DNA of 64,000 nt from the NCBI RefSeq assembly GCF_000143415.4, contig NW_003314320.1, positions 1,129,231 to 1,193,230 on the forward strand, in the 5' to 3' direction. This DNA comes from Selaginella moellendorffii (lineage: Eukaryota; Plantae; Lycopodiophyta). This document shows positions 1,457 through 27,657 of the stretch, in pieces. The position numbers and the translations under genes are program-made. The stretch's first letter is position 1. Each line of letters opens with the position of its first letter. The notes beneath the pieces were generated by a model. That model did no database searches, was not told the DNA's origin, and saw nothing but the letters and a program-made list of their open reading frames with translations.

Positions 1457-2389
1457 ATGGCAGATCAGCAATCTCCTCCTTTAACTCTAGAGCAGCAGTT
1501 GGTACAATTGCTTGATGCTATGCACTTGCAATTGAACAACCAAATTTAGTTGATGGCGGCATTCATGGCATGTGGTACAACTCCTCCTGCTCTTGGTGCC
1601 AATCCTCGCGTTCAGCCGGAGTTCTTTCGTGGGAATCCTGGGGATGATGTGTACCATTGGTTCGATCACTTCACAGTGATTGCCACATATCATTCTTGGG
1701 ATGATGCTCGACGGTTGCATGAGTTTCCCACATGTCTCCAAGGGACGGCATTGCAGTGGTACAATGGTTTGAGCGCAGCCACTCGTGGGGATTGGAGTGT
1801 TCTCCCGGACGTCTTCAAACGCGCCTTCGGACATGCTGATGATTGTGATGATGCTTTCCAACAATTGCATCGTCTTCGCCAAGGGCCATCTGAGTCGGTG
1901 ATGCAATTTGGTGTTCGTTTTCGAAGTCTTTTGCTTCATGCGGAGCCAAATATGTCGGAGCAGATCAAGCTAGGAATGTTGTGACCAGCACTTCATCAAG
2001 ATCTTGTTGGACTTGTGCATGCACTTGCTCCTGCCACCCTTGACGATGCTCTTCGCTTGGCACAACGTTATGAGACGTCGCCTCTTCCACTTCTCGCTGC
2101 ACGTCCTTCCACTCCACTTCCTATGGGTGATAGTCCTGTTCCAATGGAGGTTGATGCTGCTGCTGCTTGAGTCCAAGGACAAGCGCGAGGACGTGGTCGT
2201 GGCCGTGATGTTTGCTGTTGGGCATGTGATGAAGTTGGTCATACTTATCGGCGTTGCCGTCGTTTTCTAGATTGGCGACCTCTATTTCCTGGGTGGAGAC
2301 CTTGGCGTCAGCAACGTCCTGTGGGTGCTGCTACAGTGGAAGGTCTGGACACCGAGATGCATCCGGGAAACGAGGAGTCGCGCGAGTAA
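1457..2389 (+). pseudogene. gag: Retrotransposon gag (in-frame stops)
   Basis: ATG 1457; PEFFRG and LQGTALQWY capsid-like motifs, PMEVD (2141), zinc knuckle CWACDEVGHTYRRC, TAA at 2387-2389; internal TAG/TGA stops. Confidence 0.88.
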
Positions 2390-2426
2390 CGGAGGGACCT
2401 TGCGCGAATAAATCAGTGACCCCTCC
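2365..2426 (+). promoter_or_regulatory. Programmed -1 ribosomal frameshift signal (slippery heptamer + H-type pseudoknot)
   Basis: G GGA AAC at 2365-2371 in the gag frame; 6-nt spacer; stem1 2378-2386/2399-2407; stem2 2391-2396/2421-2426; protease ORF lies in the -1 frame. Confidence 0.78.
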
Positions 2427-5400
2427 ATCTTTCTTTCGGGAGTATCATCAAGGGGTTCACTCGGCACCAGTTCATCCAGTGTTTACTTTCCAAGCTCGTT
2501 TTTATAACAAGAGGTCTCCTATTATTCTCTCCGTGTTGGTTGATACAGGTTCGAGTTTATCTTTTATTGCTCGACCTGTTGCCACACGTTGTCGTCTACA
2601 CTTGCATCGTGCGACGGAATCAGTTTTCATTCTTTATGGCAACGGCTGTACACATGCATGTGCACGGGATGAGGTGGACCTAGTTGTGCGTGTGGGCAAT
2701 CTCGAGCTTGAGTTACAGTCATTGCGGGTGGTGCCGAGTCAAGCTTTTGACCTAATTCTTGGTATGGATTGGTTGCAACGCAATCATGCCAAGTGTGACT
2801 TTGAGGCTTTTCCCCCTTGTCTCATACTTCCTTATGTTTCATCCATTCCTCTCACTTCCATATTTCTTTGTCCCTCTACTTCTACCTCTGCTTCCATTAC
2901 TTTTGTTCCCCCACTCTTTCCTTCTGTGTTTCCATCTTGTTCTGCTTTTCCCTTTTCTGATATCTTTGTGTTGCAGCAGTTGACTGGCTCATGAAGGAGT
3001 ATTCTAATCTCTTTGAATTTGACCTATCGTCTGGGGCCAAGATTGCCACATGTCATCCGATTCCAACCGGGGATGCTCGTCCAATCAAGGTTCCTATTCA
3101 TCGTCGGTCACCTAAGGAGATCAAGATTTTATGAGCAAACGTCAAGGAAATGCTAGAGAAGGGTGTTATTCGGAAGTCGCGGAGTCCTTGGGCATGTGAA
3201 CCTTATCTCGTGACGAAGCTTGATGGGAGTATTCGTTTCTGCATCGACTATCGTCCGTTAAACGAAGTGACGATCCCAGATGTGTATCCTCTTCCTCACA
3301 CTGCTGATTTCTTGGATCGTCTGGGGCGAAGTTGTTAGTTCACCAAGCTAGATCTTGCTTCTGGGTATTGGCAAGTACTAATGGCCAAAGAAGATATTCC
3401 TAAGACTGCTTTTCATACACCATTTGGTTTGTACGAGTTCTTGGTGATGCCGTTTGGTTTGAACAATGCTCCAGCAACTTTCCAGTGGATGATGGACGAG
3501 GTTCTTTGCTATATGCCGGAGGTGACTGTTAACTTCATTGATGATGTCTTGATCTACTCGGAGGGGACGTGGGAGGAGCACGTTTGTGATATTTGTAAAG
3601 TGTTGGATTGGCTACATGACGTTGGTTTAAAGCTGAAGCGGTCAAAGTGCATATTTGGGTCCAAGGACACAACTTATTTTGGGTACCGTATTTCTCGTGA
3701 GGGTTTGCAAGTTGATCCTGACAAACTTGTGGCTATTCTAAAGTTCCCTACTCCGAAGTGTGTGAATGATGTGCAGCACTTTTTAGGTAAGGTGCAGTAT
3801 CTCGGTCGTTTTGTGAATCATCTTTCCGATCGCACTACACCATTGCGAGCGTTGCTGAAGTCATCAACGTCATCTTTCATCTGGTCTCCGGATTGTGAGT
3901 GGGCGTTCGTGGATCTCAAAGAGCTATTGACGACTTCTCTGGTTTTGGCATATCCTGACTACACTCGACCTTTTATTTTGCGCGTGGATGCTTCTGACAT
4001 TGGTCTTGGAGGTGTGTTGATGCAAGAGAGCTCGAGTGTGCCTGGTCAGCGCCATTCCATTGCATACATAAGTCGTACATTACAACCAGCGGAGATGAAC
4101 TACTCCACGATGGAGAAGGAGTGTTTAGCAGCAGTCTGGGGTTTCAAGAAACTTCATGCATATCTACATGGTTCTTGGACATTACTTGAAGGTGGCCATG
4201 CTGCTGTTACTTCATTATTGAAGCGGAAGAACCTAGTTGGTCGTACGGCTCGATGGGCTTTGAAGCTTCAGATATATGATTTCGATGTTGTTCATCGCCC
4301 AGGGAGTTCTATGGCTGATGCTAATGCCCTTTCTCGAGCTCCTCTTCCTTCTCCACTCACTTCTTATGTTTCTGACGAACATGTTATTCCAGCATCTGTG
4401 GATTTTCTAGATGAGGATTCTGTGCCATCGGCGGTTATTGTCCTTGACGTTCAGTGTCCACAAGGCGCAGAGCAAGATCTACTTTCTCTTGATGAGGTTC
4501 GCGAGGCTCAAAAGATTAAGTCGTGGATTCGAAGGCTTCGAGATGGGTTTGAGAATCCTGCATCACTTGCTGATGACTTGCCTTTCCGGCATTTACATTC
4601 TCAATATCGCCTTGAAGATGGCCTTCTTTATTTTGTGGGGACGAATCCTGATGATCTTTTACGGCTGGTGGTGCCTTCGGTGTTTATTCTGCGGTTTCTC
4701 CATGCCTACCATGATTCTCCTGTTCTAGGTGGGCATATAGGACACCGTGGTGTCATCGAGAAGCTGCACAGGTCTTTCTATTGGCCGGAGATGCAACGTG
4801 ATATTATCCGGTATGTGCGTAGCTGCGTTTAGTGCCAAACTCGTAATACTCCCCCTCGTGCTGCGGAAGGACAATTGAAGTCAATTGCGGTTTCCCGTCC
4901 GTTTGAGTTAATGGCGTTTGATCTTATGGGACCTTTTCCATGGTCGACTTTTGGCAATGAGTATGTTATTATTGCTTTTGACTACTTGACTCGTTGGGTG
5001 GAAGTTGGTGCTCTTGCTAGCACCTCTGCAACTGCTGTTGGATACTTTCTCCTCAATCGAGTGGTGTTCCAGCATTCTTGTCTAGAGCGGATTCTTTTGG
5101 ATAATAGTCCCGCATTTATGGCTGAGGCATTTCATGTTTTGATGTTTCGATTGGGGATATGCCACACTTTCACGAGTGCTTATCATCCACAATCAAACGG
5201 TCTGGTGGAACGGCTTATTCAGACATTCAAAGGGATGATTGCGAAGTATGTGAACCTTCAGCATTCGGATTGGGATGGTTATTTGCCATCTCTTCGATAT
5301 GCATATGTTATAGGGGTGTAGAGTTCTGTTGGTGTTTCACCATATAAACTCCTATATGGTCATGATCCAATATTACCAACGGAGCTGGGTTTACCTTCGC

Positions 5401-6050: not shown

Positions 6051-7720
6051 AATTAAGTTATCATCTAATAAACAATAAATGTAGAGTATAGCACCACCAA
6101 AATCATGATAATTTATAAATATAGGATGAATCATTCAAAAAAAATTATTAACAAGTATATCATCAAGAAAACTTAATGATAAATCTGAACTATCAAAGAT
6201 TATAGATAACATGTTAAACAACTTATGAAAAAAAAACTCAAAAAACATAAAATATCATCAATTAGTAAGCAAAATACTTGAGAATGTTTGACTCAAAGGA
6301 AATAACTTCCTAATTTAATAGAACTAACTTTAGTAACAGTCAATAGAATAAAATGAATGTCAAAATGGTTAATAAACATTTGTTTGTATTAACCATTGCA
6401 CTAGTCAATCTGAATAGATTTCAATCAACAATACTAAAGAATTTAAGTTGCTTAAACAAACATTAGCAACATCCTATTAATATCTCAAATTCAAAAGACC
6501 AATTTAGAGCAAACCACAAAAAACATATGGTAATGCGAAAAACCAAACGCTATAAAAAAAATAATTAACCATTATAAAAAATCACTAATTATTTTATCAA
6601 TAAAGAGACACATAATCATTGTTAAAGAAATAATCCACCATCCCAAAGAATTGCAAATCATTCAATATTAATAATAATCTAGTAAAACCTTTGATATAGA
6701 TAATCAACTATCCTTAATGAAAGTTAATCATCACCAATAATCACAAAATGTAAACACCAACTTCACGATCAAAACTAATAAGCCAAAATACCTTCCTTGA
6801 CAATTCCTAAAATAAATGGAATAATAAACATGAAAACTCAAAAAACCAAAAACTTGAAAAAGTCTATAGCCAAATTTCGTATAACAACAATCACAAATCT
6901 TATATCAATTAATTTTAATACCAAAGAAGAAATTATGGTACAACCCACAATATTCTTCTTAACACATCCATAAATTAAATTTCATAATGCAAAAGCTAAT
7001 GAATCTAAAATCCAAACATAACAAATCTATGCACAATAAGTGATCATGAAACAATCCTCCATGAATCCATTTATAACAAGATTTAACTCACTTCATAATA
7101 AGCACAAGAATCATCATCAATGATTGATATATCCCCAACTTAAATCTATAAAGAATTAAAAACTTTAATATTGATCATAAATTCTTCCTTTAGTAAAATT
7201 GGTATAGTCTATAACTAAATCACTTTTTAAAGAAAGGCCAAAGCTCAATCTTTAGTAAGCAATTTTGTCTAAAACACAATTAACCCAAATTATTAGTGAA
7301 CTCATTTGAATGCAAATATAATTGCTAACTAGCAAATGCATGAATATCAATAACACAAAACTATAGCTAAATCATCAATACTATCTACATCAAAACTAAT
7401 GAAACTCAATATTAATCATATAAAGAGATATCTTATCCCGCTCCAATCTCAACTTTAATAATGTCAAAGCATCACTTCAACATCATCAACATTAGAACAA
7501 AACCAAAAAAAAACATTGATTTAGAGTGCTATGGAATCTAAAATCTTAATAAGCTCAAACTTTGGAAGATCCACACAAGTGCTTTTGGTAACTCAATGCT
7601 ACAGATGTAAAATCTTAAGCACAATGCTACAACTTTCACAACTGCTCAGCTCAGCTAGATGCACAACTTGGGTGCTTCTTGAACTAGTACCCAGTTCACA
7701 AGTCAGCCAGTTCAAGGATT

Positions 7721-8980
7721 AGACCTGGGAGTGATATGCTTAGTGGCTGCTAGTCAAGTCAGGGTGAGAGTGAAAAAATGGAGCAAGAGAAGCTCTAAAA
7801 TCAAACCTTGTACCTTCTAAGTGTTTGTCATCGCAACATTGCCTTGTGTTCTTTTTTTCAGTCTCCATAGAAACTGAAATTCTACTGATCGATCTTTCCT
7901 TTCGTTCCTCCAGATAGCGAATATTCGTTTGTTTTTAAAATTTTGATAGAAAACCCTAACTGGTGATGAAACTCAATTTGGAGCAGATAAAAGATTGTTT
8001 CTTTGGAGCGATCCTCTCCAAAGCTGGCGAGTGTGTCTTCTTGCCTTCCTCCACATCAGCAAACTTAGAGGGCTTCTTCACAAATTCAAAGCTTAGAAAT
8101 ATTTTGTACAAAAACTATTGATGTTTTTTGGGATTATTTTTTATCATCACATTCACCCAAATGTTTGTGGAGATATAAGCTTTGTCATTTTTAAACCATC
8201 TTTAGCTCAAAGAAGATGAGCACTTTTCTGCCATGAATGAATTATTTTTATGTTATTTTCAAATAAAACCAGAATTTTATTTTATTTTCCCAAAAAATAG
8301 TCATTTTCATAAATACCACAATTATATCACACATACCAAGATTGCAATATTTAAAACATCCTTGTCAAGTGTTTGTACTTAGAACTGTTGACATCCTCTC
8401 CTTGCACAGAAATATCCTCAGCACTGTTGGAGATTAATGGCCAAGGTGGCTGCCAAGACTACCTTTCTACAAGTCAGAGTAGTTTTGAAATGATTTGTAC
8501 CAGAATAATATAACAACATAACGTGGCCTCTTTGCGTGTAGCATGGACGTGATCTCAGTCTTGTCAAAGCGCTGCTGCTCTATGCCCAGCTGCTTTGCGA
8601 ATTGCATCGCATGCTTGCTCGTGATTGCCTGCGAGTTTCGGTTCTAGGGAGACATTGTGGAGCCCCTCCTGGTGACGATGCTGGCCAAAACCTATGGAGT
8701 GTGGTTGCCACAGTCACCTTTGTGGCAGCCACGTATAAACTCCAGAGGAGTTCTAAGTTCACGCTCTTTCAAGTCTCCGTCCGGTACAGATTCTCGCCTT
8801 GGCAGCATGGATCTCGGGGATTTGCAAAGCCACTCGAGGGGTGTGAATTGATCGTGCTGCCGGTGGTGATGGGTTTACTTTGCGGAGTGGGAGAGCTGGG
8901 AGATGGGCTCGTCGGACGTGGATGCGTGGGCCGGGTGGCGGCTGGCGTGGTGTGCGTGGTAACGGCTGCCTGCGTGGATA
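7721..8980 (+). pseudogene. Fragmented, decayed paralog of the Sec61alpha-like gene at 10409-11590
   Basis: 7721-7768 matches about 10612-10659; 8543-8980 matches pieces of about 10767-11450 (KALLLYAQL, LWSVVATVTFVAATYKLQ, VAAGVVCVV) with large deletions. Confidence 0.85.
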
Positions 8981-9459
8981 GTTTGCCACGTAATGTACGC
9001 ACGATTCTAAATTGTCAATGCAACATCTGCGATCTTCTTCATGATGTTTCAGTCTCCGTAGAAACTAAATATCTACTGATCGATCCTTTGTTTCGATCTC
9101 CAAAACCATCTCCCAGCCACCATCGTCTTGTTGAGCCACTGCCACCTCTCCTCCACTACTATTGCTCTCCAGCGTTTCTTTTCGCGGACTACTTTTCAGC
9201 GATCGAGATAATACGTGGTGAATATTGGGGCCAACTGTTGACCGTTTTATAAAACTTCATACTTTTTTAGTGGCTAGCGAAGAGTGGATTCTATGCGGCA
9301 AGAACGGTGATGAAGCTATCCCTTTGAGCAGCATGCGGCGAAACATTGTCACTGCCGTCGCAGGTCGTACTCCTATGAGAGACAACTTCTTGATCATGCA
9401 AAGTTTGAGTTGCCCATTAGTTGTCTAGCGACCCACGTCTGGCACTTCGCCTTGTGCCA

Positions 9460-9850
9460 TGGATGGTCTAGAAATACAAAGCCTGTGCTTAACATTTTCC
9501 ACAAAGATCTTACAAGTGGAGAAGCAAGGATTATACTTAGAACATCCAGGGGATGTTCTCCTGCATTTGTGCAGGCACTGTTGATCCGGATTAATAAAGG
9601 GCATGATAGCGAGGGTGTTTAATAGACACAGTAAACTATCATTTAGCAAATATTGATAAACCAAACTCAATATTGTGGAGGATACTTGCAAGTGCAAAGG
9701 TGGCTGCAAAGAACATCATCGAAAATCTTTTGCCTATTTCTACAGAGACAAGAATGAGATACTGAAGCCCACAGCAGAGAATGTAAGACGATTCCAATAC
9801 TAGCCTCGGGGCAACGTAGAAAGCACTGCCAAAAAGATCTTCACCCGGTC
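9460..9850 (-). pseudogene. CDPK gene fragment including intron sequence
   Basis: Nucleotide similarity to about 21941-22366 (ggatggtctagaaat...aaagcctgtgctta...tacttagaac); [11 protein letters not shown]; deletions and stops. Confidence 0.8.
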
Positions 9851-10408
9851 TAAAAGGATGATCCAGACGAAGAATGATCTCTACTTCCAATGTGGAAAAT
9901 ACAGAGAAATTATGTGAAAGGTAGTAGACTTTAATGGAGGGGCTAATAATGGATTAAGGAGAAAAAGTTCTGTTCTTCTCATCCATGTCTGCAGTAAAAG
10001 CCAGAATCAATTGTGCATTGTGGCCAAAACAGTCCTAAATGTAATCATTGAGAAGATGAGCAAAATGGCACTAGTAACAATGCTCTTAGTTATTTTGAAT
10101 GTATAGGAAAGTGAGAAACAAGCAAAAAGTACCTTTAATTAGCTGTAAGCCAGCAAAACCAAATCCTTACTCCATGGCATAAATATTCATATCCATTATT
10201 ATTATGCAATTTCACAATAGAACCGTTTGAACCAGGCATTAATTTGTTATTGTGGCACAATTCACAGTGATTTTAAAATGAATGCCATATATTATTCTTA
10301 ACAGAATTATTAAAAATAAAATGCCTGGAATTCTCGGCGTTAACTTAAGGTTTGCTGCTCACTTTGTATTCAGGCAGACGCCTCAAAGGGTTTCTTCAAA
10401 CTAGGGCA

Positions 10409-11590
10409 ATGGCTTTGTGGATCCTCTCGCACCCGTTTTCGCGCAGGCCCCCGAGGTATTGGGGCTTGCCTCACAGGTTCACCGTCCTAGCGGCGATCTC
10501 CCTGCTGTGGATAGCTCTCGGCAGCATCCCGCTCTATGGTATGTCCAAGACGCCGGCAGCTGGCTGGGCATGGGTGCGCGAGGTGTTCGCATCCAGCCCA
10601 GGAACTCTCACAGACCTGGGAGTGATATGCTTGGTGGCTGCTAGTCAGGTGAGGGTGAGGTTGCCAATGAGCGAGGAGGTGCCCATGCCCGAAGACAAAG
10701 TAACGAAGTTCGTCATGTTTGGCGTGTCGCTGCTCCTCCCAGTGCTGCCCCTTGCTGCTGGTCGCTATGGACGTGATCTCGGTGTTCTCAAGGCGCTGCT
10801 GCTCTATGCCCAGCTCAGCCTTGCGAATTGCGTCGCGTGCTTGTTCGTGATTGCCTGCGAGTTTCGGCGCTGGGGAATAGGAGTTGACATTGCGGAGCTC
10901 CTCCCCGCGGCGACTCTGGCCAAGAGCTTGGTTGTCAAGGCGTTGAGCCCATTCCCTCCAGCGGCACCGGTTAGTGGCAGAAGGTTTGAAGGTGCGCTGC
11001 TTCACGGGCTGTCTGTGGTGCATGGCAATTACAGTAGGAGTGCCTTTTATAGTGCTCTTGGCACCGGCGGCGGCGACGGCGGCGGGGATCTTGCTTCTGG
11101 GAATGAAGTGGTGAGCTTGTGGAGTGTGCTTGCCACAGTCACTTTTGTGGCGGCCGCGTACAAACTCCAGAAGAATCGGAAGGTCACGCTCTTTCAAGTC
11201 TCGGACTGGCTACAACCGGTACAGTTTCTCGCTTTGTTGGCATGGATCTTGGGCGTCGTTTCCTCCAAGGCGCTCACGCTGTCCGATGGGCGCGGTTTGC
11301 TCACCTGGATCTTGGTGCCGGTGGCGATGGGTTTACTGTTCAAGGCGTTTGCGGCGTGGGAGAGTTGGGAGCTGGGCTCGTCGGAGACGGATGCTTGGGC
11401 CGGGGTGGCGGCTGGAGTGCTGTGCGTGGTGGCGGCTGCCACGGGATGCGTGGGCTCGGCTTTTGGATGGCTGATAGTTTGTCGGCTGATCTACAAACTT
11501 TACCGCTCAGTGTGCTCTGCAATTATGACCCGGCGGATGCTAGAAAAATTGGAGCAGGAGGGGGTGCCCTCCATGTACGCACGCTTCTGA
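10409..11590 (+). CDS. Divergent intronless Sec61alpha/SecY-family membrane protein (~393 aa)
   Basis: Colinear Sec61alpha motifs: IPLYG, W.R.VFAS.PGTL.DLG, GRYG..LG...A.L...QL, KALSP, FEGA, LATV.F, AG.L.V.A...G.VGS..G.L.....IY; about 10 hydrophobic segments; uninterrupted ORF. Confidence 0.8.
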   Translation: MALWILSHPFSRRPPRYWGLPHRFTVLAAISLLWIALGSIPLYGMSKTPAAGWAWVREVFASSPGTLTDLGVICLVAASQVRVRLPMSEEVPMPEDKVTKFVMFGVSLLLPVLPLAAGRYGRDLGVLKALLLYAQLSLANCVACLFVIACEFRRWGIGVDIAELLPAATLAKSLVVKALSPFPPAAPVSGRRFEGALLHGLSVVHGNYSRSAFYSALGTGGGDGGGDLASGNEVVSLWSVLATVTFVAAAYKLQKNRKVTLFQVSDWLQPVQFLALLAWILGVVSSKALTLSDGRGLLTWILVPVAMGLLFKAFAAWESWELGSSETDAWAGVAAGVLCVVAAATGCVGSAFGWLIVCRLIYKLYRSVCSAIMTRRMLEKLEQEGVPSMYARF

Positions 11591-13965
11591 AACTCAAATC
11601 AAATTTTGTAGTTTATCATCAGTAAGGGAACGAAAGAAATAGACGGTTTTCAGCATTCACCTGTTAATTCTTGTAAGAAACTAAAAGAATCTCAAACTAC
11701 TTTGTGGATGGATGAGGCATGGCTCTAGGCACTGGGCGGCGAAGATATCAGCATGCTCGACAGATTACGCCAGGACTTTGTAACAGGCACTCGGTGAATT
11801 TGCACACGGGTAGCTGGTCAACAGGGTGACAGCGAGCAATATGGGATATGTCCAGCAGCAGTGACCAATCATCAGCTCATGCCATGAGAGTGTAAGATCT
11901 TGGCCAGGCAGTTTCTAGATGAAATAAAAGACAAGCAAGCACACTTAATTTTTCTTCTAATCCTTTCTAGGAATTGCATTATACATTGGACTATGCTTCT
12001 TGACAAAGATGGTGAGTTATTCAAGAGGTATTTTAACAGTTCAACAATTCAAAAGAGAGGTTGCAAAATAATTAAGTTTACTTTGTATGTGTAGGCCGTT
12101 GAATCTGAAGCAAAAGCGGATCTACAACATGATTCTTAGATTTGACCAACTTATGGTGTCTCCTGATCTGATTCCGGCTTGGCACAGCAGATTGCTAGAG
12201 TTGAGGAAGAAATTATATTTTCATAAATTTGTAACCATTGGGATCAGTAGGGTGGAGATACTTTTTGTGGTAGGGCTTTTCTGGAGTAGGGAAGACTGGG
12301 TTACTTATTGAGGCTATAGCAATGATTCGAAAATTTCTGGCTCCAAGCAACAAATGGGCCTGTGGATGCTTTTTACATCAGTTTTAATGGTTTAGATGTC
12401 ACACTTTTAAGCTTGCCTCGAGTGTTTGAGGGACTGTCCATTTCTGATCCATCCATTTTTCAATTGATATCCTAAACACTCACTTTGGTAGAAGTGATTG
12501 GCATTATATTTGTCTTTAGATGTTTCTTCCTCAATTTTTTTGGTTGTCTTTTTTTTTTGTCTGAAGTTTTAAACATTTTTTTCTTCAAAGGAGGGGGTTA
12601 AAAGGGATAGATGGGAATTTGGCCTCAACTATAGTGCATATAGTTTTCACCTTTTATGTTATAGTGATTTATTAACCACAAAGTGGAACTTAAACCCTTT
12701 ATATACCATGTGCCACATGCCATATATCTAAGGATAATAGAGTGAAACTTGAGTTTTAAGGTTTTAAACCACTGAATGATGATATAGAAAGAGCAATAAA
12801 ACTGAAGCACAGAGCAACTCCCGAATATATTAAAGAATGAAAGGACAAGAGCACGAAGCAATTTAGAATAGTCCCAAAACTTATAGCATTCTAATGCTAG
12901 GACTAACACATAAAATAAAGCCACATAAAGTTTAATGCTGTGGGTTAATGCTGGCTTAATGTGAGGATATATTAACTAAATTTTGTGGAATTTAGGCTTA
13001 AACCCAAACCAGACACAGAATAAACATAAGTACATAAATGGGAACTAAACTATACCTTAAGTTAATTAGCCATACCTTACCCATTATCCTTATTATATAT
13101 TTAAAACCCTTCACATCCCCTTTATTATCTTTATCCAACATTGCACATAGGAAGTTAAGTTTACTTCATTTGTTTTTCACATCCTCTTTATCCCTTTTTT
13201 GAATTCTGAAGCATTAAGTCTATTCAAACTTGTTATACTTGTCTTCACTCTATTACCTATGTTCAAAGTTCAAAATTATGACTTTAAAGTTCATTTGAGC
13301 ATTTAACAATTGCACACAATAGTTCATTGGGATTTAATAGTGAGCTAATGTGTGTGCTATAGCTTTGAGTTTTATTTTAATCATGGTTATAAATAACTAT
13401 GTTAGTAGTTTTGTGAGAACTTTAACTTATTATAGTAATTTATAATGACCCAACAAAAGCTCCAAAGAGTTCCACCTTTATCATCATCACCTTTTCATTT
13501 TCCAAGAGGGGATTCTGTAAATATATGTATATATATAGTTATATTTACTCATCTACTAACTAGTAAGTAGGGTCTAAACCCCAATTAATATATTTATTCT
13601 AAGCACTCACAAATAGAATTATTATACTTATATAAATTTTAATTTATAATATGATTCATTAATTATGCAAATTAACATATTTTTGTTCAATATATCATTG
13701 ATAAGAAAATAGTAAATAGAGAATATCCAGGTATAGTCAATCGAGAGTTGGAAATCCATCCGTAGGCCCTGAGGGCTTCCTGCTACATCCTTCTCGATGT
13801 GGTGGAACTCAACCTCACTGATATTGTGGTGGCAGACTTGAGGTTCTTGACTGACAGCATGCCTCAGCAGCACGGCCTGTGGTACTTCTGCACCCCCGTC
13901 AGCTCGATGTTTAGCCTGGTCACGTAAGCTGCCACGATCTCGTGGATCCACCGCCCGACCTGACG

Positions 13966-15120
13966 CTAGATCGAGTTGAGCTTGTCCGAGACGTTGAGCC
14001 TGTCCTGCATGTAAGTCTGGAGATCCGATTCCGCGAAGTAGATCTCGGCGTTGTGAGGCTCCGTCGCCAGAGCCTTCCACCTTTGCCTTGTCGCAGAGAG
14101 TCGATTGAGTCTGGCACGCCGCCAGGAGCGTCGTCGCCTGGCTCGAAAGGCAAGCTGTCGATGGGCTCCTCGGCCCGGCCGAGCAGCCCCTTCCGGCACA
14201 GGATCCGCCAGGCAGTCGTAGTGAGCCAGCGCCGGGCTCACGCCATGATAGATGTTGGCGAAGTTGAAGACCCGCAGCGTCTCAGGTGGATGACGCTTGA
14301 TCACTTCCATCGTTATCATCCAGTTCTCGCTGAGAGGAGAGCCCGCCACCGTCTTAACAAGTTTGCGGCGTTTGAGAGGCGGATGGTCACAGTAATGATC
14401 CGCCGCCGCTGGTGTCTTCCTCTTGTTTCCAGGCAGCGGGTAGAATAGCCCTGTCAAGGAAAAGAGTTGGCCGATTCCACAGAAATCACGAAAAAACTTA
14501 CTGTCAGGGAGAGTAAGTTTGCGGTGATTGAGAGGCGGCTGATCACAGTAATGATCCACCGGTGCCATCCTACCACGACCATCAATCTCGGAGTAGAATA
14601 GCCCTGTTTACAAGGAAAAGAGTCGGCCGATCCCATAGAAATCACGAAACAATCTTACTGTCAGGGAGAGTAAGTTTGCGGCAATCAAGAGGCGGATGAT
14701 CACAGTCATGATCCACTGCCGCCGGTGCCTTCCTCTTATTTCCAAGCAGCTCTGCCGCACCACGATCATCAAACCCCCCAGTTTAGTGAGCCGACCACAC
14801 AGAAATCACGAAATAAGCTTACTGTTAGGGAGAGTAAGTTTGCCGCGATCGAGAGGCGGATGATCACAGACCGCCGGCGGTGCCTTCCTCTTGTTTCCAA
14901 TCACTGTGTTATGATCATCGAGCTCCGGGTATAACAACCCTGCTTACAAAAAAAAGCGTTAGCGGAAAACAAGCGACAAGACCTTGGAAACCTTGACCCA
15001 GCTCGGGCTTCCGGGCGAACTCCTGTAGCTCCACCACCTTTTCATCGTCAGAGCGTAGGATTTGCTGCTGCTTGGGCGGTTCGACGCTGCAAAGCTGTTC
15101 GGGGGATGAATCGTGCTGTA
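13966..15120 (-). CDS. Orphan multi-exon gene (or pseudogene) with tandemly repeated exons; product unknown
   Basis: GT-AG introns at 14451-14501, 14604-14658, 14940-14982; repeated exons encode GNKRKxP..(DHY)CDHPPLxxxKL. Start not identified. Confidence 0.4.
14355..14900. repeat. Four degenerate ~155-165 bp tandem units
   Basis: Anchor aagtttgc..gagaggcgg.tg.tcacag recurs at about 14359, 14515, 14672 and 14837. Confidence 0.85.
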
Positions 15121-15569
15121 CCAAAGAGAGCATCAACAAAAAAGGAAAAAAGAAGGGGAAAATGAGAGAGGAAAAGGAGAAACGCTAGCCATACCACTTC
15201 CTGTGCAGCTTCGATTTCCTGAGCCTACAAGCAGGAATGAGAAATTGAGAAGAAGCCCCAAAACTCACCTCAATCAGAGCATCTAAATCACTCGGGAGCT
15301 CATCCTTGACATTCCATTCACTGCATACAAAGTTAAAAGCAAGCACGATTTCCGCTATCTGTAATAGCTCAAACAACATCTTGGAAAGAAAGAGAGAGAG
15401 CGCTCGCTAGAAACAAGCAAATACCCAAATCTTAACCTAGTTAAGCAAATGGCTTGTAAGGTTTAGGTAACCCTTGACGGTACCTTTTAATTTTCAACCA
15501 AAGTATAATTAACACGAGTAACTGAGAGTAAAGGTCTTGGATTTACCGCTCTGCTAGTAGTATGCATGA

Positions 15570-16714
15570 CGAATCTTTCCATGGCTGGAGCATTCTTCCA
15601 CAAGTAGTAGGACCAGTCCACCATTGCATTGAAATAGTACTTTCTGCACCACCTTAAAATGTTGAGATTTGATGACTACATTGTCACAGCCGTTTCAACA
15701 CTTAATTCCAAGTTGTTTGATGTCCCCAATTGCCTCGGGAGCTGTAAAAGAAATCGCTCTAGCACTCTCATGTTGACATGCCCATCGCAAATTATAAACT
15801 CCCCCACCTCACTAAAAACCTCCATATATGTTTGCTGAAGCTTGTCAATGCCATGGTTTTGGAGGGCAGGAAATCATTCCCCAGAAGGAAGCACAAGAAC
15901 ACGAGATCCCTCACGGTGGACCACAGCCACATGGAGCATGGCTTTTCCATCTGCATCTCAAAATCATGCATGAGCGTCTCGATGCTGATGAGCTCGTAAA
16001 TCATCACTCCATCCTTTGGCGTTTGGCAGAGGATGTTGATCTTCCTGGAGAGCAGGCTAGCGAGAGCCAGCATGATCAAGTTGGTGTCGCATCCAACCAT
16101 GCAGTGGAAGTCATGGGCGTTGAACAGCAGAGTTCATATGTGGTTGAAGATGTTGAGCTTGCCCTCCCTGTCCTCCTCCAATGTGGAAATGATCCACTCG
16201 AGCCTCGAGCAAGTGATTGATGTCCTCCGGTGATGATCATATGAACTTGACAGCATGCTTGCCACAAATTGTCACAATTCACTCTCCAACCCATTCATGA
16301 AAGGTGTTCCATCGTGGAGCATTGCCATCTTGGCTTTGCAATTGCTTAGGATGAGATCATTTGTCTGATCTTTAGTGGAATTCTTAGATGCAAAAATACA
16401 TTCTCACGTCCTTTTTGAATGGATCAAAACATCATTAATAAAGTTAATAATCACCTCAAATTCATCTTCTAAGGGGGACAAGGAAGATAAACTTAATTGG
16501 AGCCACCATGGTGATGAACTTGCAGAACTCTTAATAAAAGGTGGTGAAGGTGGCAGGGCAATTGTCACTCTCCAGGATGACTCAGATGATGGCGTTGAGG
16601 TCAACATACAAGTTGGCAGTATCATAGAGAAGAAGATTGTTCTTGGCACATCACATCTCTCGTGCAACAAGGATGCTTGGATACAAGCCAGGCGAAAAAC
16701 CCAAAAACTCCCAT
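15570..16714 (-). pseudogene. Apparently intronless XRN-family 5'-3' exoribonuclease pseudogene
   Basis: MGVFGFFAWL start, NLYVDLNAII, GTPFM, HCMVGCDTNLIMLALA, DLVFLCFLLGNDFLP; stops, frameshifts and deletions. Confidence 0.82.
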
Positions 16715-16841
16715 GATCGATTGCTTGATCCCTTTTGGAAAGTGATACACCCTCACAATCATTTTCGCTGTTATATAGTCGTGAGGATTAAATGTGGTTA
16801 GATAAATACGTTTAGCTAGTAAAGTTAATTAAATATATTAC

Positions 16842-18108
16842 TTATCTGCGGTTTTGAGCATATACCTTTGTCACCCCCAAAATCTTCCAAGCCGAGAGAC
16901 TAGTTGCGCTCGTCAATGGGCAGTGAATCTGGAGTTACTCCCTTAATAGTTTCCATTACGGCTTTCTCAGTGGCAGGCTTGGCTGAGAAGAAAATACACA
17001 AAGAGTGAGCTTATCCCGTTTAGAGCTCAAAACATACCCAAGGCGTATACAAGGATGGACCATTTCAATCCTGGTTCCAGCAACGCCGGCATTCGTATTT
17101 CAGGGTGGCCGTATGTGATCTGCAGTGAGAATGGTTATAGATCAAGAACTATAGAAGTTTTCTGTTTTCCTACCAGCATAAACACTCCTTGTGGTTTCAA
17201 AATCCTGCAAGAGAGAGAGTATGAACTTAATCAGTAGTAGTACACACAGAACCTGTAAGTCTCTCTTCGCATTTGTAGAACGCCTTCGGCCGGATCAACT
17301 CCACACTGAAAGAAGGAACGCAAATTGCATTAGACAAGGATATTTTTGGTGACACAAACACGTTCTAGCATGGCGCCGGCCAGGCCTGAAAAACAAAGAG
17401 AAAAAAATGTAAGAGGAGACTCTGGAGAGTAAACTATAACTTTGTTACCTTTGTCAATGACCGCATCAAAGGAACAGTCTTGAAACGCACTCATGTCCCG
17501 TGAATCTATTGCCACATCTTAAGTTTCGTCAAGGAAGATATGGCTGCTGCAAAGAAGTAACATCACCAAGCCCAAGGATACAAGAGAGCTGAGGAACGTG
17601 AGCATATCTAGCTTTGAAGTTGTCAATCACCATCGAAGATAGATCAGTGTTGACGATTTCCCGGTAGCCATCTTCCACCATATCGTTGACATTGCTGTTT
17701 TACATCACTGGAATTAGTATTCTTTTCTATGGCATCGCTCATTGAGATCTTGGTACCTGAATTGCCACACCCAGCCATCAAAACCCGGGAAGATTCGGGG
17801 ATGTGCTTACGGACAATCGTCTCGAATCTGGAGTAATCCGAGAACCAAAGCATCGGGTTGCTCAGCGTAGCGCTTGTCCCAGTAGGATATCTCGCCATAG
17901 CCACCGGGCTTGGGTGCTGAAGGAGCAAGGAAGAAGGCGGGGTAGCTACAAGCTCCAAATATTTCGAGAATTTCTTACCAGGGAATTTCACCGCTGAGAA
18001 TGGAGGAACCGAGGAGCTGATCTTCGCAAAGCACCGGATGATTCGCGATCGCGCCCTCGCCTCGATGCTGCCGCAGTAGCACGCGCAAGCAATGCGCGCC
18101 GAGAGCAT
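16842..18108 (-). pseudogene. EEF1AKMT4/METTL13-like SAM methyltransferase with transit-peptide-like N-terminus; frameshift near 17848
   Basis: YGEISYWDKRY, WFSDY, VLMAGCGNS, FDAVIDKG, ITYGHP motifs over several short-intron exons; YWDKRY and WFSDY are in different frames. Confidence 0.75.
17518..17581 (-). other. U12-type (minor spliceosome) GT-AG intron
   Basis: Minus strand: GTATCCTT donor and TTCCTTGAC branch site just upstream of the AG. Confidence 0.8.
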
Positions 18109-18179
18109 TTGGCTTAAACCCTAGATAAACCCTTTGATATACAATTAGAGTGGTTCCGATCGAGTGATGGGATTGTTCC

Positions 18180-19165
18180 AGCTGAATCCGTGTAGCAAGG
18201 AGGAAGAAGAGGGAGCGCATGGCAAGGCCATAGCCGGCGCACAGCCTCCTCCCGACGGAGAATGGGATGATCTGGACGTGCTGCCCCGGGCGAGATAGGA
18301 ATCGCTCGGGCTGGAATTCGTTGACGAGGAGTTTGCATTCGCGGGGATTATGGTGCCATGGCCATCGCCGAGCTCCACGGGGCGGAGGCGCCCCAGCGGC
18401 AACGCCGGGTGGAGGCGGAGGGCCTCCTTGAGGATCGCCTGGATGAATGGGAGATTTGGGAGGTCGGATTCTTCCACCCCTCCCGATGATTTGATCCAGT
18501 TCTTCTTGGGCGTTGCGCATGACCTCGTGTTTGCTGATCACTTCGGACATGTACCACTCGATCGTGGAGGTTTGAATCCGGCACCCACCATATCCTGGAA
18601 GAACGATGAATCGTCACATCGCAGAGAAGAGGATCCAGAAGGATGGTGATCACTTACGCACAATGATCTCTTGGTCCGAGAGCTTGTCACTGTCGTCCAG
18701 GGAGATGAGACCGTCCACAAAGTCGCGGCAGACAAACCCATCGCCCCGCCTTCTTGCGCTCCCGGTGCTCCCGGACTTGATCGTCGAGCAGCGCCTTGAT
18801 CCGGGGCATGATCTCGCCCCTCATCTTGGCGTAGACGCCGTGGAGATCCATCTAATCGAGCGACGGGATGATGTTGAGGTCTGCCCGGCCATGTTATTGA
18901 TCGTCTCTACCACCTCGGGACACTCCTCGCTGAAGAGCGTAAGGCACAGCGACCCGACGCGTGTCTGGCGAAGAGGGTCGGCTCGCTGCGCCGCGATCGA
19001 TCGAGGATGCTGTCCATGGCGGCAGGGGGCACTGGTGGTGACCATGGCGTTGCTGAAGAGGTTCGTGGCGCAGATCTTGCGCATGAGCTTCCCCGGTGAG
19101 CGGAAGGCCAGGTCGCTCCAGCCGAAGCTGAAGATCCGGAAGAACTCCTCCGACTGGGACTCGGC
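18180..19165 (-). pseudogene. Cytochrome P450 (CYP71 clan-like) pseudogene
   Basis: ESDLPNLPFIQAILKEALRLHP, FQPERF, PFSVGRRLCAG heme motif, spread over several frames. Confidence 0.9.
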
Positions 19166-21137
19166 TGATTGGAGGCAGTATTTTAATGCAAACTTGTTTA
19201 ACATCGTCTGTACTTTATGGTGAGCCATTCGGTATGCTACCAAGTGATATCCAGGCGGAGATTAGATGATAAAGTGTCATGTCTCATGATCACGTTAGGA
19301 AAGGGCTTGGGATAGCAAATGGGAAAATGTTGCCTCTTTATTTGTTATTGGATGAGTCTCAAATGCTTGTGCAGGAGGTTATTGCCAAAGGCAGTGATCT
19401 TCAGGGGCATGTGTAATTGGGTAGGCACTATCATGACTAAACAGTCCTCCCAATTGCTGGGAAATATATGCCAGGGTGGATGGACATCAAAATCACACTA
19501 GAGCCTATGGCTTCTGCAATTCAGGTATTAAGTCTCTCTGTCAAAGACTCCAGGTTTGCATCCATCGAGCCTCAGATAAGGGTACTTTTAGAATACTGTT
19601 CCTGCATGCAAAACTGCAAGTCGTGGTGAATAGGATCCTATTGGAGGGGAACAGAGACATGGTGAAGCATATGTTGCAACTTTGTTTGACAGGTGTGAAG
19701 CTTAAGGCTGCTTCATCATTGGAGATCCAAGAATGTTTAAAAGGGTACGTATATATGCAGGGAACTCCAGCAGGAATCAGGTATAAAAGTCCAACACTGT
19801 TGCTATATGTTCTTTGCAGCTTGGTATTCTTAAGCCAGAGCCCCTAAGAGGGGATTACCTTGAGTACGAGTTTTTTTATGTTCTGATGAGAGTCTATGAG
19901 GGCACTATATACTTTGATTGCAGGACATGGCGCTCGAGGAGCTTTTTGATCTTTCCTGGGGCAATAGGGGATAATAGCCTTCTTCAGATGGAGGTTGAAG
20001 TTAAGGGGGTAGTGATCATCTCATTGATCACATGTATCGATTCTATAATCTCTTCCATGTTCAAGGTATGTTTGAGTGAGACTTAGAGATGTACAAATTC
20101 TATAGTACTAATGTATGGATTTCTTTTCTTTCTGGATGACATTTATATTACAAGAAATGATGATGGATGCCATTATTCATTGTAGTGTAAGGACAAGAGT
20201 TTTGCTACTGATGCTAGGTTCTTTTCAAAAAGCTAAACCAGCAAGAACCTGTAAGAGATTTGGCTAGAACTAAAAAGAAAGAAAACCCAGATCAGTGTGC
20301 AAGAAGGAAAAGAATAATTACTGTTGCCTTTGATCCCAAGTTTATTATCGAAGGTAAGACAAAGATATTTGGTCTTTGGAATGGATGCTGGAGAATGGTT
20401 TACTTCTAAGCTTTCATAGATTTATGCCTAAGCATATGCAATAAGAATTTCTTGGGTTGTAAAAATAATAAATCTAATTCAAACAAATAGATATGATTCA
20501 AAGTTTAGAAAAGTCATATATAAACTTCAATCTCTGTTCTGGGCCATAACTAAAAGGCTATGTTTTTGGTTGTCAAGAGGATCATCAGCTAAATTGGTTT
20601 GAACGATCTGATATTAAGAATTACAAAGATATTTTGTTACAGAGTCAAACCGTGATGCGTCAAGATATGGAAGCCCCAAAAAGGTGATATACAGATTCAC
20701 AAAGAAGATTCCCGCAGATTCCGTTTTGAAATCCTAACAGTTGAAAAATACAGCAATATAATTTGGAAATCCCACTCCTCGTGTTTAGATCGAATTGGGC
20801 TCCACGGCTCCAGCTCCCACCTTGCATTCCCATCCTCCTCGTCTATGCTCCTCTGCGTTTCTTTTCCACTCGCACATAGGAAATCGCGGCCAGCCGAGAG
20901 AAAGGAGGGGTGGCTTCAAATTCGGGGAGTTCGGCGGGAGAGAACGTTGCGTCAGACGCCGGCCAGCAGACCACCGATGCTCCCAATAGTGGCGACGATG
21001 GGCGGAGTACGCCGGCACACACTCAAACATGGACAAGTGAGATGGTACTCCATCAAACAGCGTTTTTTTCTAACGAAACCATCCCTCCTTCCACCATATG
21101 ACAGAACACTCTCTCTAAGTTTTATTCTTCTTCTTCT

Positions 21138-23527
<2,390 letters not shown>

Positions 23528-27595: not shown

Positions 27596-27657
27596 TTGCT
27601 CTTGACATTCTCTCAACCCAAGCGGAAGAAGGTCCCAGCACGACCCTGACTTAAAAT

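What the first reader, a model, noticed from the sequence alone, without database searches (positions are those of the whole stretch)
10409..11590. Intact 'loop-less' Sec61alpha paralog: channel core kept, ribosome-docking loops deleted
Seen: an uninterrupted, intronless ~393-codon ORF among decayed neighbours. By eye it aligns colinearly with plant Sec61alpha through all ten TM segments and the plug region (WAWVREVFASSPGT vs YWMRVILASNRGT). The cytosolic loop after TM6 is cut to about KNRKVTLFQVS, the loop after TM8 to about ELGSSETD, and the lumenal loop 7/8 to about ALTLSDGRG. Established: loops 6/7 and 8/9 of SecY/Sec61alpha carry the basic residues that dock on the ribosome, and Sec61alpha is normally very conserved (~475 aa) and intron-containing in plants. 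Inference: a lineage-specific, probably retroposed translocon-fold protein that cannot act co-translationally. It could be a post-translational or ERAD-type channel, an ion/solute leak, or a decoy for Sec61beta/gamma. This is the best candidate for an undescribed system here.
Basis: partly seen in the sequence, partly recalled or inferred. Interest (0 to 1): 0.78.

Follow-up and report, generated by a model that had tools for sequence, protein, structure and literature searches.

The report
Loop-less Sec61alpha-derived gene in spikemoss
The spikemoss Selaginella moellendorffii carries and transcribes an intronless, extremely diverged copy of the protein-export channel Sec61alpha that keeps the ten membrane helices and the plug but lacks the loops that dock the ribosome. 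Selection still protects part of it, and its function is unknown.

Summary
Window 10409-11590 (+) is an uninterrupted 393-codon ORF in Selaginella moellendorffii scaffold GL377624.1.

- **Homology:** it is a true but very distant Sec61alpha homolog, about 20-28% identical. PDB phmmer gives E 1.7e-11 and hhalign 99% for TM1-5. TM9-10 is weaker (E 1.5e-5). No Pfam SecY hit reaches threshold.
- **Fold:** a model built with a Sec61 alignment superposes end to end on Sec61alpha/SecY (Z 26, 355 residues).
- **Lost loops:** loops 6/7, 7/8 and 8/9 are reduced to 12, 13 and about 4-7 residues. The ribosome-contact residues K268/R273 and H404/R405 fall in the gaps.
- **Expression:** contigs from four studies cover only 10394 to about 11930, without joints, while the flanks and a decayed upstream copy are bare. 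This fits a discrete intronless transcript.
- **Selection:** dN/dS against the tandem paralog is 0.55 (CI 0.38-0.82). It is 0.16 over TM1-plug-TM2b (p 5e-5) and near neutral in TM6-10.
- **Family:** it belongs to a small birth-and-death family (P0002, a pseudogene at 7721-8970, and a frameshifted copy on GL377658). No kin were found in any other organism.
- **Open points:** function, and whether the copy arose by retroposition, remain unshown.

The scan had already reported sister copies on other DNA (s1-402693, s1-374896, s1-385141).

The parts
10394..11929 (+). Transcribed unit as seen in assembled contigs of four public runs: a short leader, the ORF and about 340 nt of 3' sequence. The strand is assumed from the ORF.
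   Evidence: contigs span 10394-11007, 10978-11116 and 11087-11929 (X1), 10412-11758 (X2), 10428-11611 (X6) and 10477-11611 (X15). There is no depth at 7600-10357 or beyond about 12330, and there are no joints.
10409..11590 (+). Intact intronless ORF of 393 codons plus stop: the loop-less Sec61alpha-like protein.
10463..10666 (+). TM1, the IPLYG motif, the plug helix (TM2a) and TM2b (aa 19-86). This is the most constrained part.
   Evidence: Alignment. Against the paralog there are 13 synonymous and 6 nonsynonymous differences, pN/pS 0.16, Fisher p 4.6e-5.
10691..10945 (+). TM3, TM4 and TM5 (aa 95-179), with the conserved GxYG, QL and GxG motifs.
   Evidence: TM3 has 5 synonymous and 1 nonsynonymous difference; TM4 and TM5 are near neutral.
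10946..11116 (+). Lumenal hinge loop 5/6 (aa 180-236), with the SP...FEGA motif and a Gly-rich GGC-repeat stretch. It is a deletion hot-spot among the copies.
   Evidence: FEGA is aligned to Sec61. Deletions in this region: 129 bp in L001, 143 bp (frameshifting) in L002, about 196 bp in the decayed copy, and 9 bp in expressed alleles.
11117..11173 (+). TM6 (aa 237-255).
11174..11209 (+). Stub of cytosolic loop 6/7 (aa 256-267, 12 residues, still basic). About 21 alignment columns that hold K268/R273 of vertebrate Sec61alpha are missing.
   Evidence: residue roles from PMC4081569.
11210..11260 (+). TM7 (aa 268-284).
   Evidence: It is near neutral between the paralogs.
11261..11299 (+). Stub of lumenal loop 7/8 (aa 285-297). 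About 38 columns are missing.
11300..11371 (+). TM8 (aa 298-321).
11372..11392 (+). Stub of cytosolic loop 8/9 (aa 322-328, acidic). 35 columns that include the GHR motif (H404/R405) are missing. The flanking anchors ELGSSETD and AWAGV align to canonical sequence on either side.
   Evidence: PMC4081569.
11393..11524 (+). TM9 and TM10 (aa 329-372), with the GxxGSxxGxL motif.
   Evidence: Second phmmer stretch; the confident part of the hhalign C-part alignment.
11525..11587 (+). Fast-evolving charged C-terminal tail (aa 373-393).
   Evidence: pS 0.68, pN 0.51. A 5-bp indel relative to L001 changes the last residues.
11923..11928 (+). AATAAA hexamer next to the end of the longest X1 contig. It may be a poly(A) signal. 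The 3' end is not defined by contigs.
7721..8970 (+). Decayed tandem copy (pseudogene): fragments matching ORF positions 10612-10659, 10767-10923 and 11120-11440, in different frames, with an in-frame TAG at the W155 position and an AT-rich insertion. It is silent in the four runs.
   Evidence: no depth.

Best explanation
This is a real, transcribed, intronless nuclear gene of Selaginella moellendorffii. It encodes an extremely diverged derivative of the ER translocon subunit Sec61alpha.

It is the most complete member of a small birth-and-death family. The other members are P0002 (5.8 kb upstream of the window), a pseudogene at 7721-8970, and a frameshifted copy on scaffold GL377658.

The protein keeps the ten-helix SecY core in the canonical topology, the plug and mostly hydrophobic pore-ring positions. 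It has lost most of cytosolic loops 6/7 and 8/9 and of lumenal loop 7/8. What remains of loop 8/9 is acidic.

Shown here: homology, loop loss, expression, and purifying selection concentrated on TM1-plug-TM2b-TM3.

Inferred: it inserts in the ER membrane and cannot dock ribosomes in the canonical way, because the segments holding K268/R273 and H404/R405 are absent. It therefore does not serve as a co-translational translocon. Selection falls on the plug and N-terminal gate module, while TM7 and the other C-half helices drift. From this I judge it more likely to work through that membrane-embedded module without a ribosome: as a mostly closed pore-like scaffold or a competitor for translocon partners or substrates (Sec61beta/gamma, signal-peptide-like helices). 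A finely gated protein-conducting channel seems less likely.
For: - **ORF and composition:**
- **Homology:** PDB phmmer E 1.7e-11; hhalign 99.2% for aa 2-220; TM9-10 at E 1.5e-5.
- **Fold:** AF2 model pLDDT 69, pTM 0.68. The top 46 Foldseek PDB hits are all Sec61/SecY. VIA gives Z 26.4, 355 residues aligned, model 1-372 against chain 11-465. The ESM-atlas search gives TM 0.78 over 357 residues.
- **Loops:**. Ribosome-contact residues are as reported in PMC4081569. PMC2171681 was seen only as a search listing.
- **Helices:** ten hydrophobic helices are present. My reading of that sequence is that loop charges fit the positive-inside rule.
- **Expression:** contigs from four runs in four studies cover only the ORF plus short flanks and have no joints. 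X1 matches this copy with 0 differences over 10394-11116.
- **Selection between paralogs:** dN/dS is 0.55 (bootstrap CI 0.38-0.82), TM1-5 is 0.41 (Z 3.15), and aa 19-86 has pN/pS 0.16, p 4.6e-5.
- **Frame preservation:** five of six indels against the paralog are in frame. Seventeen variant sites in transcript contigs (8 synonymous, 9 nonsynonymous) include no stop or frameshift, and the 9-bp deletion is in frame.
- **Hydrophobic pattern kept at about 25% identity:** the stem branch is 4.17 substitutions per site, which is hard to reconcile with long neutral decay.
Against: - Constraint is weak for a Sec61 relative. TM6-10 has dN/dS 0.78, not different from 1.
- The family shows decay: one pseudogene in the window, and a 143-bp frameshifting deletion in the GL377658 copy.
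- It is found in a single species, so there is no deep conservation.
- Pfam SecY does not hit, and Plug_translocon is below its cut-off (18.1 against 22.1 bits).
- The 3D model rests on the Sec61 alignment; the family-only model failed (pLDDT 38).
- The runs are only guessed to be RNA, and contigs give no strand or level.
- No protein-level, localisation or interaction data exist.
- One aligned pore-ring position in TM5 is a proline, and a glutamate is inserted nearby.
Confidence: 0.55

Rival explanations
1. It is an expressed but functionless duplicate. On this view a Sec61alpha-derived family once had, or briefly had, a function and is now decaying slowly by birth and death. The open frame and the residual dN/dS below 1 would reflect recent ancestry, gene conversion among copies, or selection against toxic misfolded membrane proteins rather than a present function.
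For: Overall dN/dS is 0.55-0.63, and the C half is near 1. The window holds a pseudogene copy. The GL377658 copy is frameshifted. P0002 has lost the FEGA hinge. The family is restricted to one species. A segment of low dS at aa 298-345 suggests gene conversion.
Against: Selection on aa 19-86 is strong and significant (pN/pS 0.16, p 4.6e-5). Indels are in frame, and every expressed allele seen is intact. Ten hydrophobic helices are kept across a stem of about 4 substitutions per site. The decayed copy is silent while this one is transcribed.
Confidence: 0.3
2. It is a working protein-conducting or solute/ion channel that runs without a ribosome, for example post-translational import, retrotranslocation or a Ca2+ leak. 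On this view the short loops are an adaptation.
For: The full SecY fold, the plug and mostly hydrophobic pore-ring positions are kept. The plug and TM2b are the most constrained part. The Sec63 FN3 contact with loop 6/7 is dispensable in yeast (bioRxiv 10.1101/2020.12.14.422728), so losing that loop does not by itself exclude Sec63-type gating.
Against: TM7, the partner helix of the lateral gate, and TM4/5 evolve almost neutrally. TM5 carries an inserted Glu and a Pro at a pore-ring position. Loop 6/7 is the universal docking or priming site for the ribosome, SecA and Sec63. There are no functional data.
Confidence: 0.2
3. It does not descend from the plant's own Sec61alpha. It would instead be an ancient eukaryotic paralog, or a gene acquired from a foreign source such as a protist, a symbiont or a virus.
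For: The ML tree places the family outside the sampled crown of eukaryotic Sec61alpha (support 93/81, not starred). The AU test disfavours a family-plus-plant clade (p 0.028).
Against: The stem is 4.17 substitutions per site and the composition is deviant, which is the classic setting for long-branch attraction to the outgroup. The best non-family hits in the exhaustive search are plant proteins: Oryza, Artemisia and Festuca. No donor-like sequence exists among 1.84e9 representatives, viral contigs or metagenome contigs. The gene sits among ordinary plant genes.
Confidence: 0.07

Closest known systems
Canonical eukaryotic Sec61alpha (Pfam PF00344 SecY + PF10559 Plug_translocon)
   Same: It shares the colinear ten-TM core, the IPLYG motif, the plug helix motif, the GxYG, QL and GxG motifs, SP...FEGA and the TM10 GxxGSxxGxL motif. 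The model superposes end to end (Z 26).
   Different: It is only 20-28% identical, whereas canonical proteins are 87-91% identical from angiosperms to mosses and Klebsormidium. It has 393 residues instead of about 475. Loops 6/7, 7/8 and 8/9 are cut to stubs, with K268/R273 and H404/R405 lost. The gene is intronless, whereas a Rhododendron Sec61alpha gene spans 9.6 kb in at least 6 coding blocks. It fails the Pfam thresholds.
Yeast Ssh1 (non-essential Sec61 paralog)
   Same: Both are diverged, dispensable-type paralogs of the channel subunit that exist beside the essential one. Ssh1 appears among the fold matches (2ww9, Z 21.3).
   Different: Ssh1 keeps the cytosolic loops and binds ribosomes; it is solved on the 80S ribosome. 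It is full length (490 aa) and works co-translationally. The spikemoss protein lacks those loops.
Accessory SecY2 of Gram-positive bacteria and plastid SCY2
   Same: These are lineage-specific, strongly diverged second copies of the channel subunit that are dedicated to special substrates (from general knowledge, not tested here).
   Different: They are bacterial-type SecY proteins that work with a SecA-type motor through loops 6/7 and 8/9. The spikemoss protein is of the Sec61/archaeal type and has lost those loops.
Engineered yeast Sec61 loop mutants (L6/L8 point mutants, PMC2171681; loop-7 deletion, from memory)
   Same: They show what loss of these loops does. L6 and L8 mutations give co-translational translocation defects, and L8 mutations lower ribosome affinity (as summarised in PMC4081569; PMC2171681 seen only as a listing).
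   Different: Those are laboratory alleles of the essential gene with single changes. Here all three loops are removed naturally in an extra gene copy.

Membership tests
SecY/Sec61alpha superfamily (homology) | Significant sequence similarity to SecY/Sec61alpha | tested here: met
   PDB phmmer E 1.7e-11; hhalign 99.2%, E 3.8e-19 for aa 2-220 and E 1.5e-5 for the C part; NCBIfam archaeal-type SecY E 2e-6, far below its cut-off.
SecY/Sec61alpha as defined by Pfam | Score above the gathering threshold for PF00344 SecY and/or PF10559 Plug_translocon | tested here: not met
   There is no PF00344 hit even at E up to 10. Plug_translocon scores 18.1 bits against a cut-off of 22.1.
SecY/Sec61alpha channel | Ten TM helices in two pseudo-symmetric halves (TM1-5, TM6-10) | tested here: met
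   Hydropathy and model helices. Full-length superposition on Sec61/SecY structures. The model depends on the Sec61 alignment.
SecY/Sec61alpha channel | Plug helix (TM2a) after TM1 | tested here: met
   Residues R57, A61, S62, G65, T66, L67, L70 and G71 align to nearly invariant columns. This is the most constrained region.
SecY/Sec61alpha channel | Six hydrophobic pore-ring residues | tested here: inconclusive
   By alignment V72, V76, I161 and L355/I356 are hydrophobic, but the second TM5 position aligns to P166 beside an inserted E163. The TM7 position cannot be assigned. Reference numbering is from memory.
Ribosome-coupled Sec61alpha translocon | Cytosolic loop 6/7 with conserved basic residues (K268, R273) | tested here: not met
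   These residues lie in a 21-column gap. The stub is 12 aa, although it is still basic.
Ribosome-coupled Sec61alpha translocon | Cytosolic loop 8/9 with the GHR motif (H404, universally conserved R405) | tested here: not met
   It lies in a 35-column gap flanked by well-aligned anchors. The remaining stub is acidic.
Sec61 heterotrimer | Association with Sec61gamma (SecE) and Sec61beta | not testable with these tools
Retrogene (processed copy) | Intronless copy of an intron-containing parent | tested here: inconclusive
   The copy is intronless and its transcripts are colinear. One angiosperm Sec61alpha gene has at least 6 coding blocks over 9.6 kb. The Selaginella parent gene was not retrieved.
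Retrogene (processed copy) | Poly(A) remnant and target-site duplications | tested here: not met
   None is visible in the flanks, and no flanking direct or inverted repeats were found. They may have eroded, and later tandem duplication would blur them.

The most novel reading that the evidence does not exclude
A naturally minimised Sec61-type core is kept by selection and works without any ribosome, SecA or Sec63 docking loops, for example as a partner-independent pore or as a regulator that titrates translocon subunits or signal peptides. If so, the universal cytosolic loops of SecY/Sec61 would not be needed for every function of this fold.
Probability: 0.25. Interest if true: 0.8.

Novelty: new variant of a known kind. 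Interest (0 to 1): 0.55.

Why it matters
Sec61alpha/SecY is one of the most conserved membrane proteins. Plant copies stay about 90% identical from angiosperms to mosses and streptophyte algae. Loops 6/7 and 8/9 are its universal docking sites for the ribosome, SecA and Sec63.

A transcribed extra copy that has shed exactly these loops, yet keeps the ten-helix core and a selectively protected plug/TM2 module, is a natural deletion experiment on the translocon. If it is functional, it would reveal a ribosome-independent use of the SecY fold and give a minimal scaffold for structural and reconstitution work. If it is not, it is a rare, well-resolved example of how an essential channel gene decays after duplication.

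I found no description of it in the searchable literature.

Tried and rejected
- **Family-only AF2 model** (query plus P0002): pLDDT 38, so it is uninformative. The fold evidence is therefore not independent of the Sec61 alignment.
- **ESM-atlas feature search**: no usable hit. The atlas structure search found only full-length Sec61/SecY clusters and no other loop-less cluster.
- **Kin in other collections:** none in viral contigs or metagenome contigs.
- **Naming other hits:** the other phmmer hits turned out to be canonical Sec61alpha of plants, animals and protists, plus an Asgard SecY. None were intermediate Selaginella paralogs.
- **Canonical Selaginella Sec61alpha:** a search with a plant Sec61alpha did not list it; the top 120 were angiosperms, mosses and algae. 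No parent gene could be compared.
- **Phylogenetic placement:** the family sits on a branch of 4.17 substitutions per site at the base of eukaryotes. The AU test for a plant clade gives p 0.028. I treat this as long-branch artefact and inconclusive, not as evidence of foreign origin.
- **Retroposition hallmarks and TE capture:** no poly(A) tract, target-site duplication, LTR or inverted repeat was found around the ORF.
- **Chance ORF in GC-rich DNA:** rejected (P about 2e-6). Long ORFs in other frames and on the antisense strand are composition effects.
Full report
**1. Where we are**

The window is Selaginella moellendorffii scaffold GL377624.1, about 1129231-1193230. The locus fetched for the annotated paralog P0002 overlaps window 1-5215 at 100% identity. 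The neighbourhood is ordinary plant nuclear DNA:
- Spt5 lies upstream.
- Ty3/gypsy protease, RT, RNase H and integrase remnants lie at 2254-4832.
- Downstream are a P450 fragment, a protein kinase ORF (the haplotype gene model has EF-hands, so it is a CDPK), F-box ORFs and a KH-domain ORF.

**2. The observation**

Window 10409-11590 (+) is an uninterrupted ATG-to-stop ORF of 393 codons. At its own composition (59% GC) the chance of 393 stop-free codons is about 2e-6. GC3 is 0.69 against GC2 of 0.49, which is the pattern of coding sequence.

Fragments of a second copy lie at 7721-7768, 8543-8688 and 8695-8970. They are in different frames, carry an in-frame TAG where the intact gene has W155, and are interrupted by an AT-rich insertion.

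**3. Is it Sec61alpha-like?**

Yes, but very distantly.
- phmmer against all PDB sequences returns only Sec61alpha and archaeal SecY. E is 1.7e-11 to 1e-7 for aa 19-200, with a second weak stretch at aa 329-369 on TM9-10.
- A profile of the family against a profile of twelve Sec61alpha sequences gives 99.2% probability and E 3.8e-19 for aa 2-220.
- The C part alone gives 79.8% and E 1.5e-5, and only TM9-10 aligns with confidence.
- Pfam's own criteria are not met. There is no SecY hit, and Plug_translocon scores 18.1 bits against a cut-off of 22.1.
- Identity to canonical proteins is 20-28%. Canonical plant Sec61alpha stays 87-91% identical from Artemisia to Sphagnum, Riccia and Klebsormidium.

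**4. Fold**

An AlphaFold2 model built with 37 sequences, mostly Sec61alpha, has mean pLDDT 69 and pTM 0.68.
- The top 46 Foldseek PDB hits are all Sec61alpha or SecY.
- VIA-align gives Z 26.4, rmsd 4.0 Å and 355 aligned residues, with model 1-372 on chain 11-465 of rabbit Sec61alpha.
- The ESM-atlas search gives TM 0.78 over 357 residues to a 466-aa Sec61alpha cluster.
- A model from the two family members alone failed (pLDDT 38).

The model is therefore a consistency check on the homology, not independent proof. Independent of any model, hydropathy shows ten hydrophobic helices in the expected order. My reading of that sequence is that the N-terminus, loops 2/3, 4/5 and 6/7 and the C-tail are positive, as expected for cytosolic segments.

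**5. The loops**

Two alignment methods place the same three large gaps in the family:

| Loop | Columns missing | What is left |
|---|---|---|
| 6/7 (cytosolic) | about 21 | 12 residues (aa 256-267), still basic |
| 7/8 (lumenal) | about 38 | 13 residues (aa 285-297) |
| 8/9 (cytosolic) | 35 | 4-7 residues (aa 322-328), acidic |

In a vertebrate sequence in the same alignment, the residues that contact the ribosome fall inside these gaps. These are K268 and R273 in loop 6/7, and H404 and the universally conserved R405 in loop 8/9, as reported by Voorhees et al. 2014 (PMC4081569). Cheng et al. 2005 (PMC2171681) was seen only as a search listing.

The loop 8/9 deletion is sharply bounded. The end of TM8 (W-E-x-W-E-L-G-S-S-E-T-D against W-I-E-V-S-G-S-S-A-K-D) and the start of TM9 (A-W-A-G-V against A-A-F-G-G) align on either side.

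Residue-level alignment of TM6-8 is weak. The conclusion does not depend on it: only 133 residues lie between FEGA and TM9, against about 206 in canonical proteins, and three helices must fit in that span. The short loops are shared with the paralog P0002, so they predate the duplication.

**6. Expression**

Twenty public runs from nine studies hold the sequence. I laid four runs from four studies on window 7600-13500.
- In all four, contigs cover only 10394 to about 11930, with thin traces to 12252.
- There is zero depth over 7600-10357, which includes the decayed copy, and zero depth beyond about 12330.
- There are no joints.
- One contig ends in an Illumina adapter at 10412.

The runs are only guessed to be RNA. 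Their total contig sizes are 24-56 Mb, which I compare with an assembly size of about 213 Mb recalled from the literature and not checked here. Together with the bare flanks, this fits transcriptomes and not genomic DNA. X1 matches this copy with no difference over 10394-11116, so this locus itself appears to be transcribed. Contigs cannot give strand, ends or level.

X6 and X15 carry an allele or close copy with many of the substitutions of the GL377658 copy. It lacks that copy's 143-bp deletion and has an in-frame 9-bp deletion at 11068. That makes 1173 bases, which matches the length of scan note s1-385141.

**7. Selection**

*Against the tandem paralog (L001, dS about 0.25).* I used Nei-Gojobori estimates.

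| Region | Result |
|---|---|
| aa 1-360 | dN/dS 0.55, bootstrap CI 0.38-0.82 |
| TM1-5 | 0.41, Z 3.15 |
| TM6-10 | 0.78, not significant |
| TM1-plug-TM2b (aa 19-86) | 13 syn : 6 nonsyn, pN/pS 0.16, Fisher p 4.6e-5 |
| TM3 | 5 syn : 1 nonsyn |
| TM4, TM5, TM7 and the loops | about neutral |

*Other evidence.*
- Five of six indels between the paralogs are multiples of three. The sixth lies in the last codons.
- Among 17 variant sites in the transcript contigs, 8 are synonymous and 9 nonsynonymous, and none gives a stop or frameshift.
- Against the GL377658 copy there are 8 synonymous and 7 nonsynonymous differences.
- In the protein tree the terminal branch of this ORF is 0.04 against 0.31 for P0002, so this is the slower-evolving copy.
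- This copy is also the only one that keeps the SP...FEGA hinge.

Against these points stand a dead copy in the window, a 143-bp frameshifting deletion (window 11010-11152) in the GL377658 copy, and the near-neutral C half.

**8. Distribution and origin**

In 5.8e9 clustered proteins and an exhaustive HMMER pass over 1.84e9 representatives, the only close relatives are P0002 (SELMODRAFT_423035) and P0003 (SELMODRAFT_427691). P0003 is a chimeric model that reads through the frameshift in another frame. Everything else is canonical Sec61alpha at about 30% identity, with plant proteins as the best hits. Viral and metagenome contigs hold nothing.

An ML tree puts the family on a stem of 4.17 substitutions per site at the base of eukaryotic Sec61alpha. 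An AU test of a family-plus-plant clade gives p 0.028. With such a branch and a deviant composition, I read this as long-branch attraction and leave the origin open. A vertical origin from the plant's own gene is the more parsimonious reading.

The copy is intronless, and one canonical angiosperm gene has at least six coding blocks over 9.6 kb. However, no poly(A) tract, target-site duplication or flanking repeat survives, and the Selaginella parent gene was not retrieved. Retroposition is plausible but not shown.

**9. What it most likely does**

*Shown:* this is a transcribed gene for a ten-helix SecY-fold membrane protein. It lacks the canonical ribosome-docking segments, and its plug/TM2/TM3 module is under purifying selection.

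*Inferred:* it sits in the ER membrane in Sec61 orientation. It cannot be primed by the ribosome through loops 6/7 and 8/9, and the acidic loop 8/9 stub would if anything repel rRNA. So it is not a co-translational translocon.

Loop 6/7 is also the docking site of SecA and of the Sec63 FN3 domain, but that contact is dispensable in yeast (bioRxiv 10.1101/2020.12.14.422728). A Sec63-type mode is therefore not excluded.

TM7 and most of the C half drift while the plug and N-terminal gate module are protected. For that reason I favour a role that depends on that module: a mostly closed scaffold, or a competitor for partners or signal-like helices. I favour this over a finely gated channel, with low certainty.

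My odds:
- The gene is functional in some way: about 0.55-0.6.
- It is an expressed gene in slow decay: about 0.3.
- It is a working ribosome-independent channel, as a sub-case of 'functional': about 0.2.

**10. Comparison and novelty**

The closest known kinds are canonical Sec61alpha, yeast Ssh1 and the accessory SecY2/SCY2 channels. All of these keep the cytosolic loops. Laboratory loop mutants of yeast Sec61 show what such losses do to the essential channel.

I found no paper describing this family. Within this scan, sister copies were already reported:
- s1-402693 is the P0002 gene, 4.8 kb before this window, which I re-analysed here.
- s1-374896 and s1-385141 are on other scaffolds.
- Three further notes describe other divergent intronless Sec61alpha paralogs in this genome. 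I could not check them.

**Verdict**

This is a new variant of a known kind. Interest is moderate (0.55): it is a surprising natural loop-less translocon core, but it occurs in one species, is weakly constrained and has no shown function.

Noticed in passing
window 2254-4832 (+): These are Ty3/gypsy-type LTR retrotransposon pol remnants (aspartyl protease, RT, RNase H, integrase zinc-binding domain). They lie between the P0002 paralog and the decayed copy.
   Followed up: partly
window 10924-11152: This is a deletion hot-spot in the loop 5/6 hinge and GGC-repeat stretch. Four different deletions occur among the copies: 129 bp in frame in L001, 143 bp frameshifting in L002, about 196 bp in the decayed copy, and 9 bp in frame in the expressed alleles of X6 and X15.
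   Followed up: partly
window 11300-11445 (aa 298-345): Synonymous divergence from the L001 paralog drops to about 0.06 here, against about 0.25 elsewhere. This suggests gene conversion between the tandem copies over TM8-TM9.
   Followed up: no
L002:10001-12525 (GL377658.1), protein P0003: The annotated model SELMODRAFT_427691 is chimeric. It joins a Gly-rich upstream ORF to the Sec61-like N half and then reads on in another frame past the 143-bp deletion. The alternative frame is open in the window too (11119-11625).
   Followed up: partly
L002 versus window 10396-23241: GL377658 is syntenic with the window downstream of the ORF, at 90-94% in the flanks and 98% in the ORF. Upstream of 10396 it is unrelated. 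It may be a divergent second haplotype or a segmental duplication. Together with the 1173-base allele there seem to be at least three near-identical copies in the assembly.
   Followed up: no
window 10978-11116, run X1: The X1 assembly breaks into three contigs at 11007 and at 11087-11116. The first break is 2-3 bases from the left edge of the 143-bp deletion (11010). It could mean that deletion-type transcripts are also present, but no joint was reported.
   Followed up: no
run X15 (organism B): A run labelled as a different organism holds a near-identical, intact copy (17 differences and a 9-bp in-frame deletion over 10477-11611). This is either a close relative or a labelling difference. 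If it is another species, it would be the first ortholog.
   Followed up: no
window 7856-7907 and 9047-9098: A 52-nt direct repeat (85% identical, 1191 bases apart) brackets most of the decayed copy. It may be the ends of an inserted element or a duplication scar.
   Followed up: no
window 17975-18550 (-), 22715-23527 (-), 26387-29444 (+), 29872-30810 (+): These are ordinary plant gene pieces: a cytochrome P450 C-terminal fragment, a protein kinase exon (a CDPK, by the EF-hand model on the other haplotype), F-box ORFs and a KH-domain ORF.
   Followed up: partly
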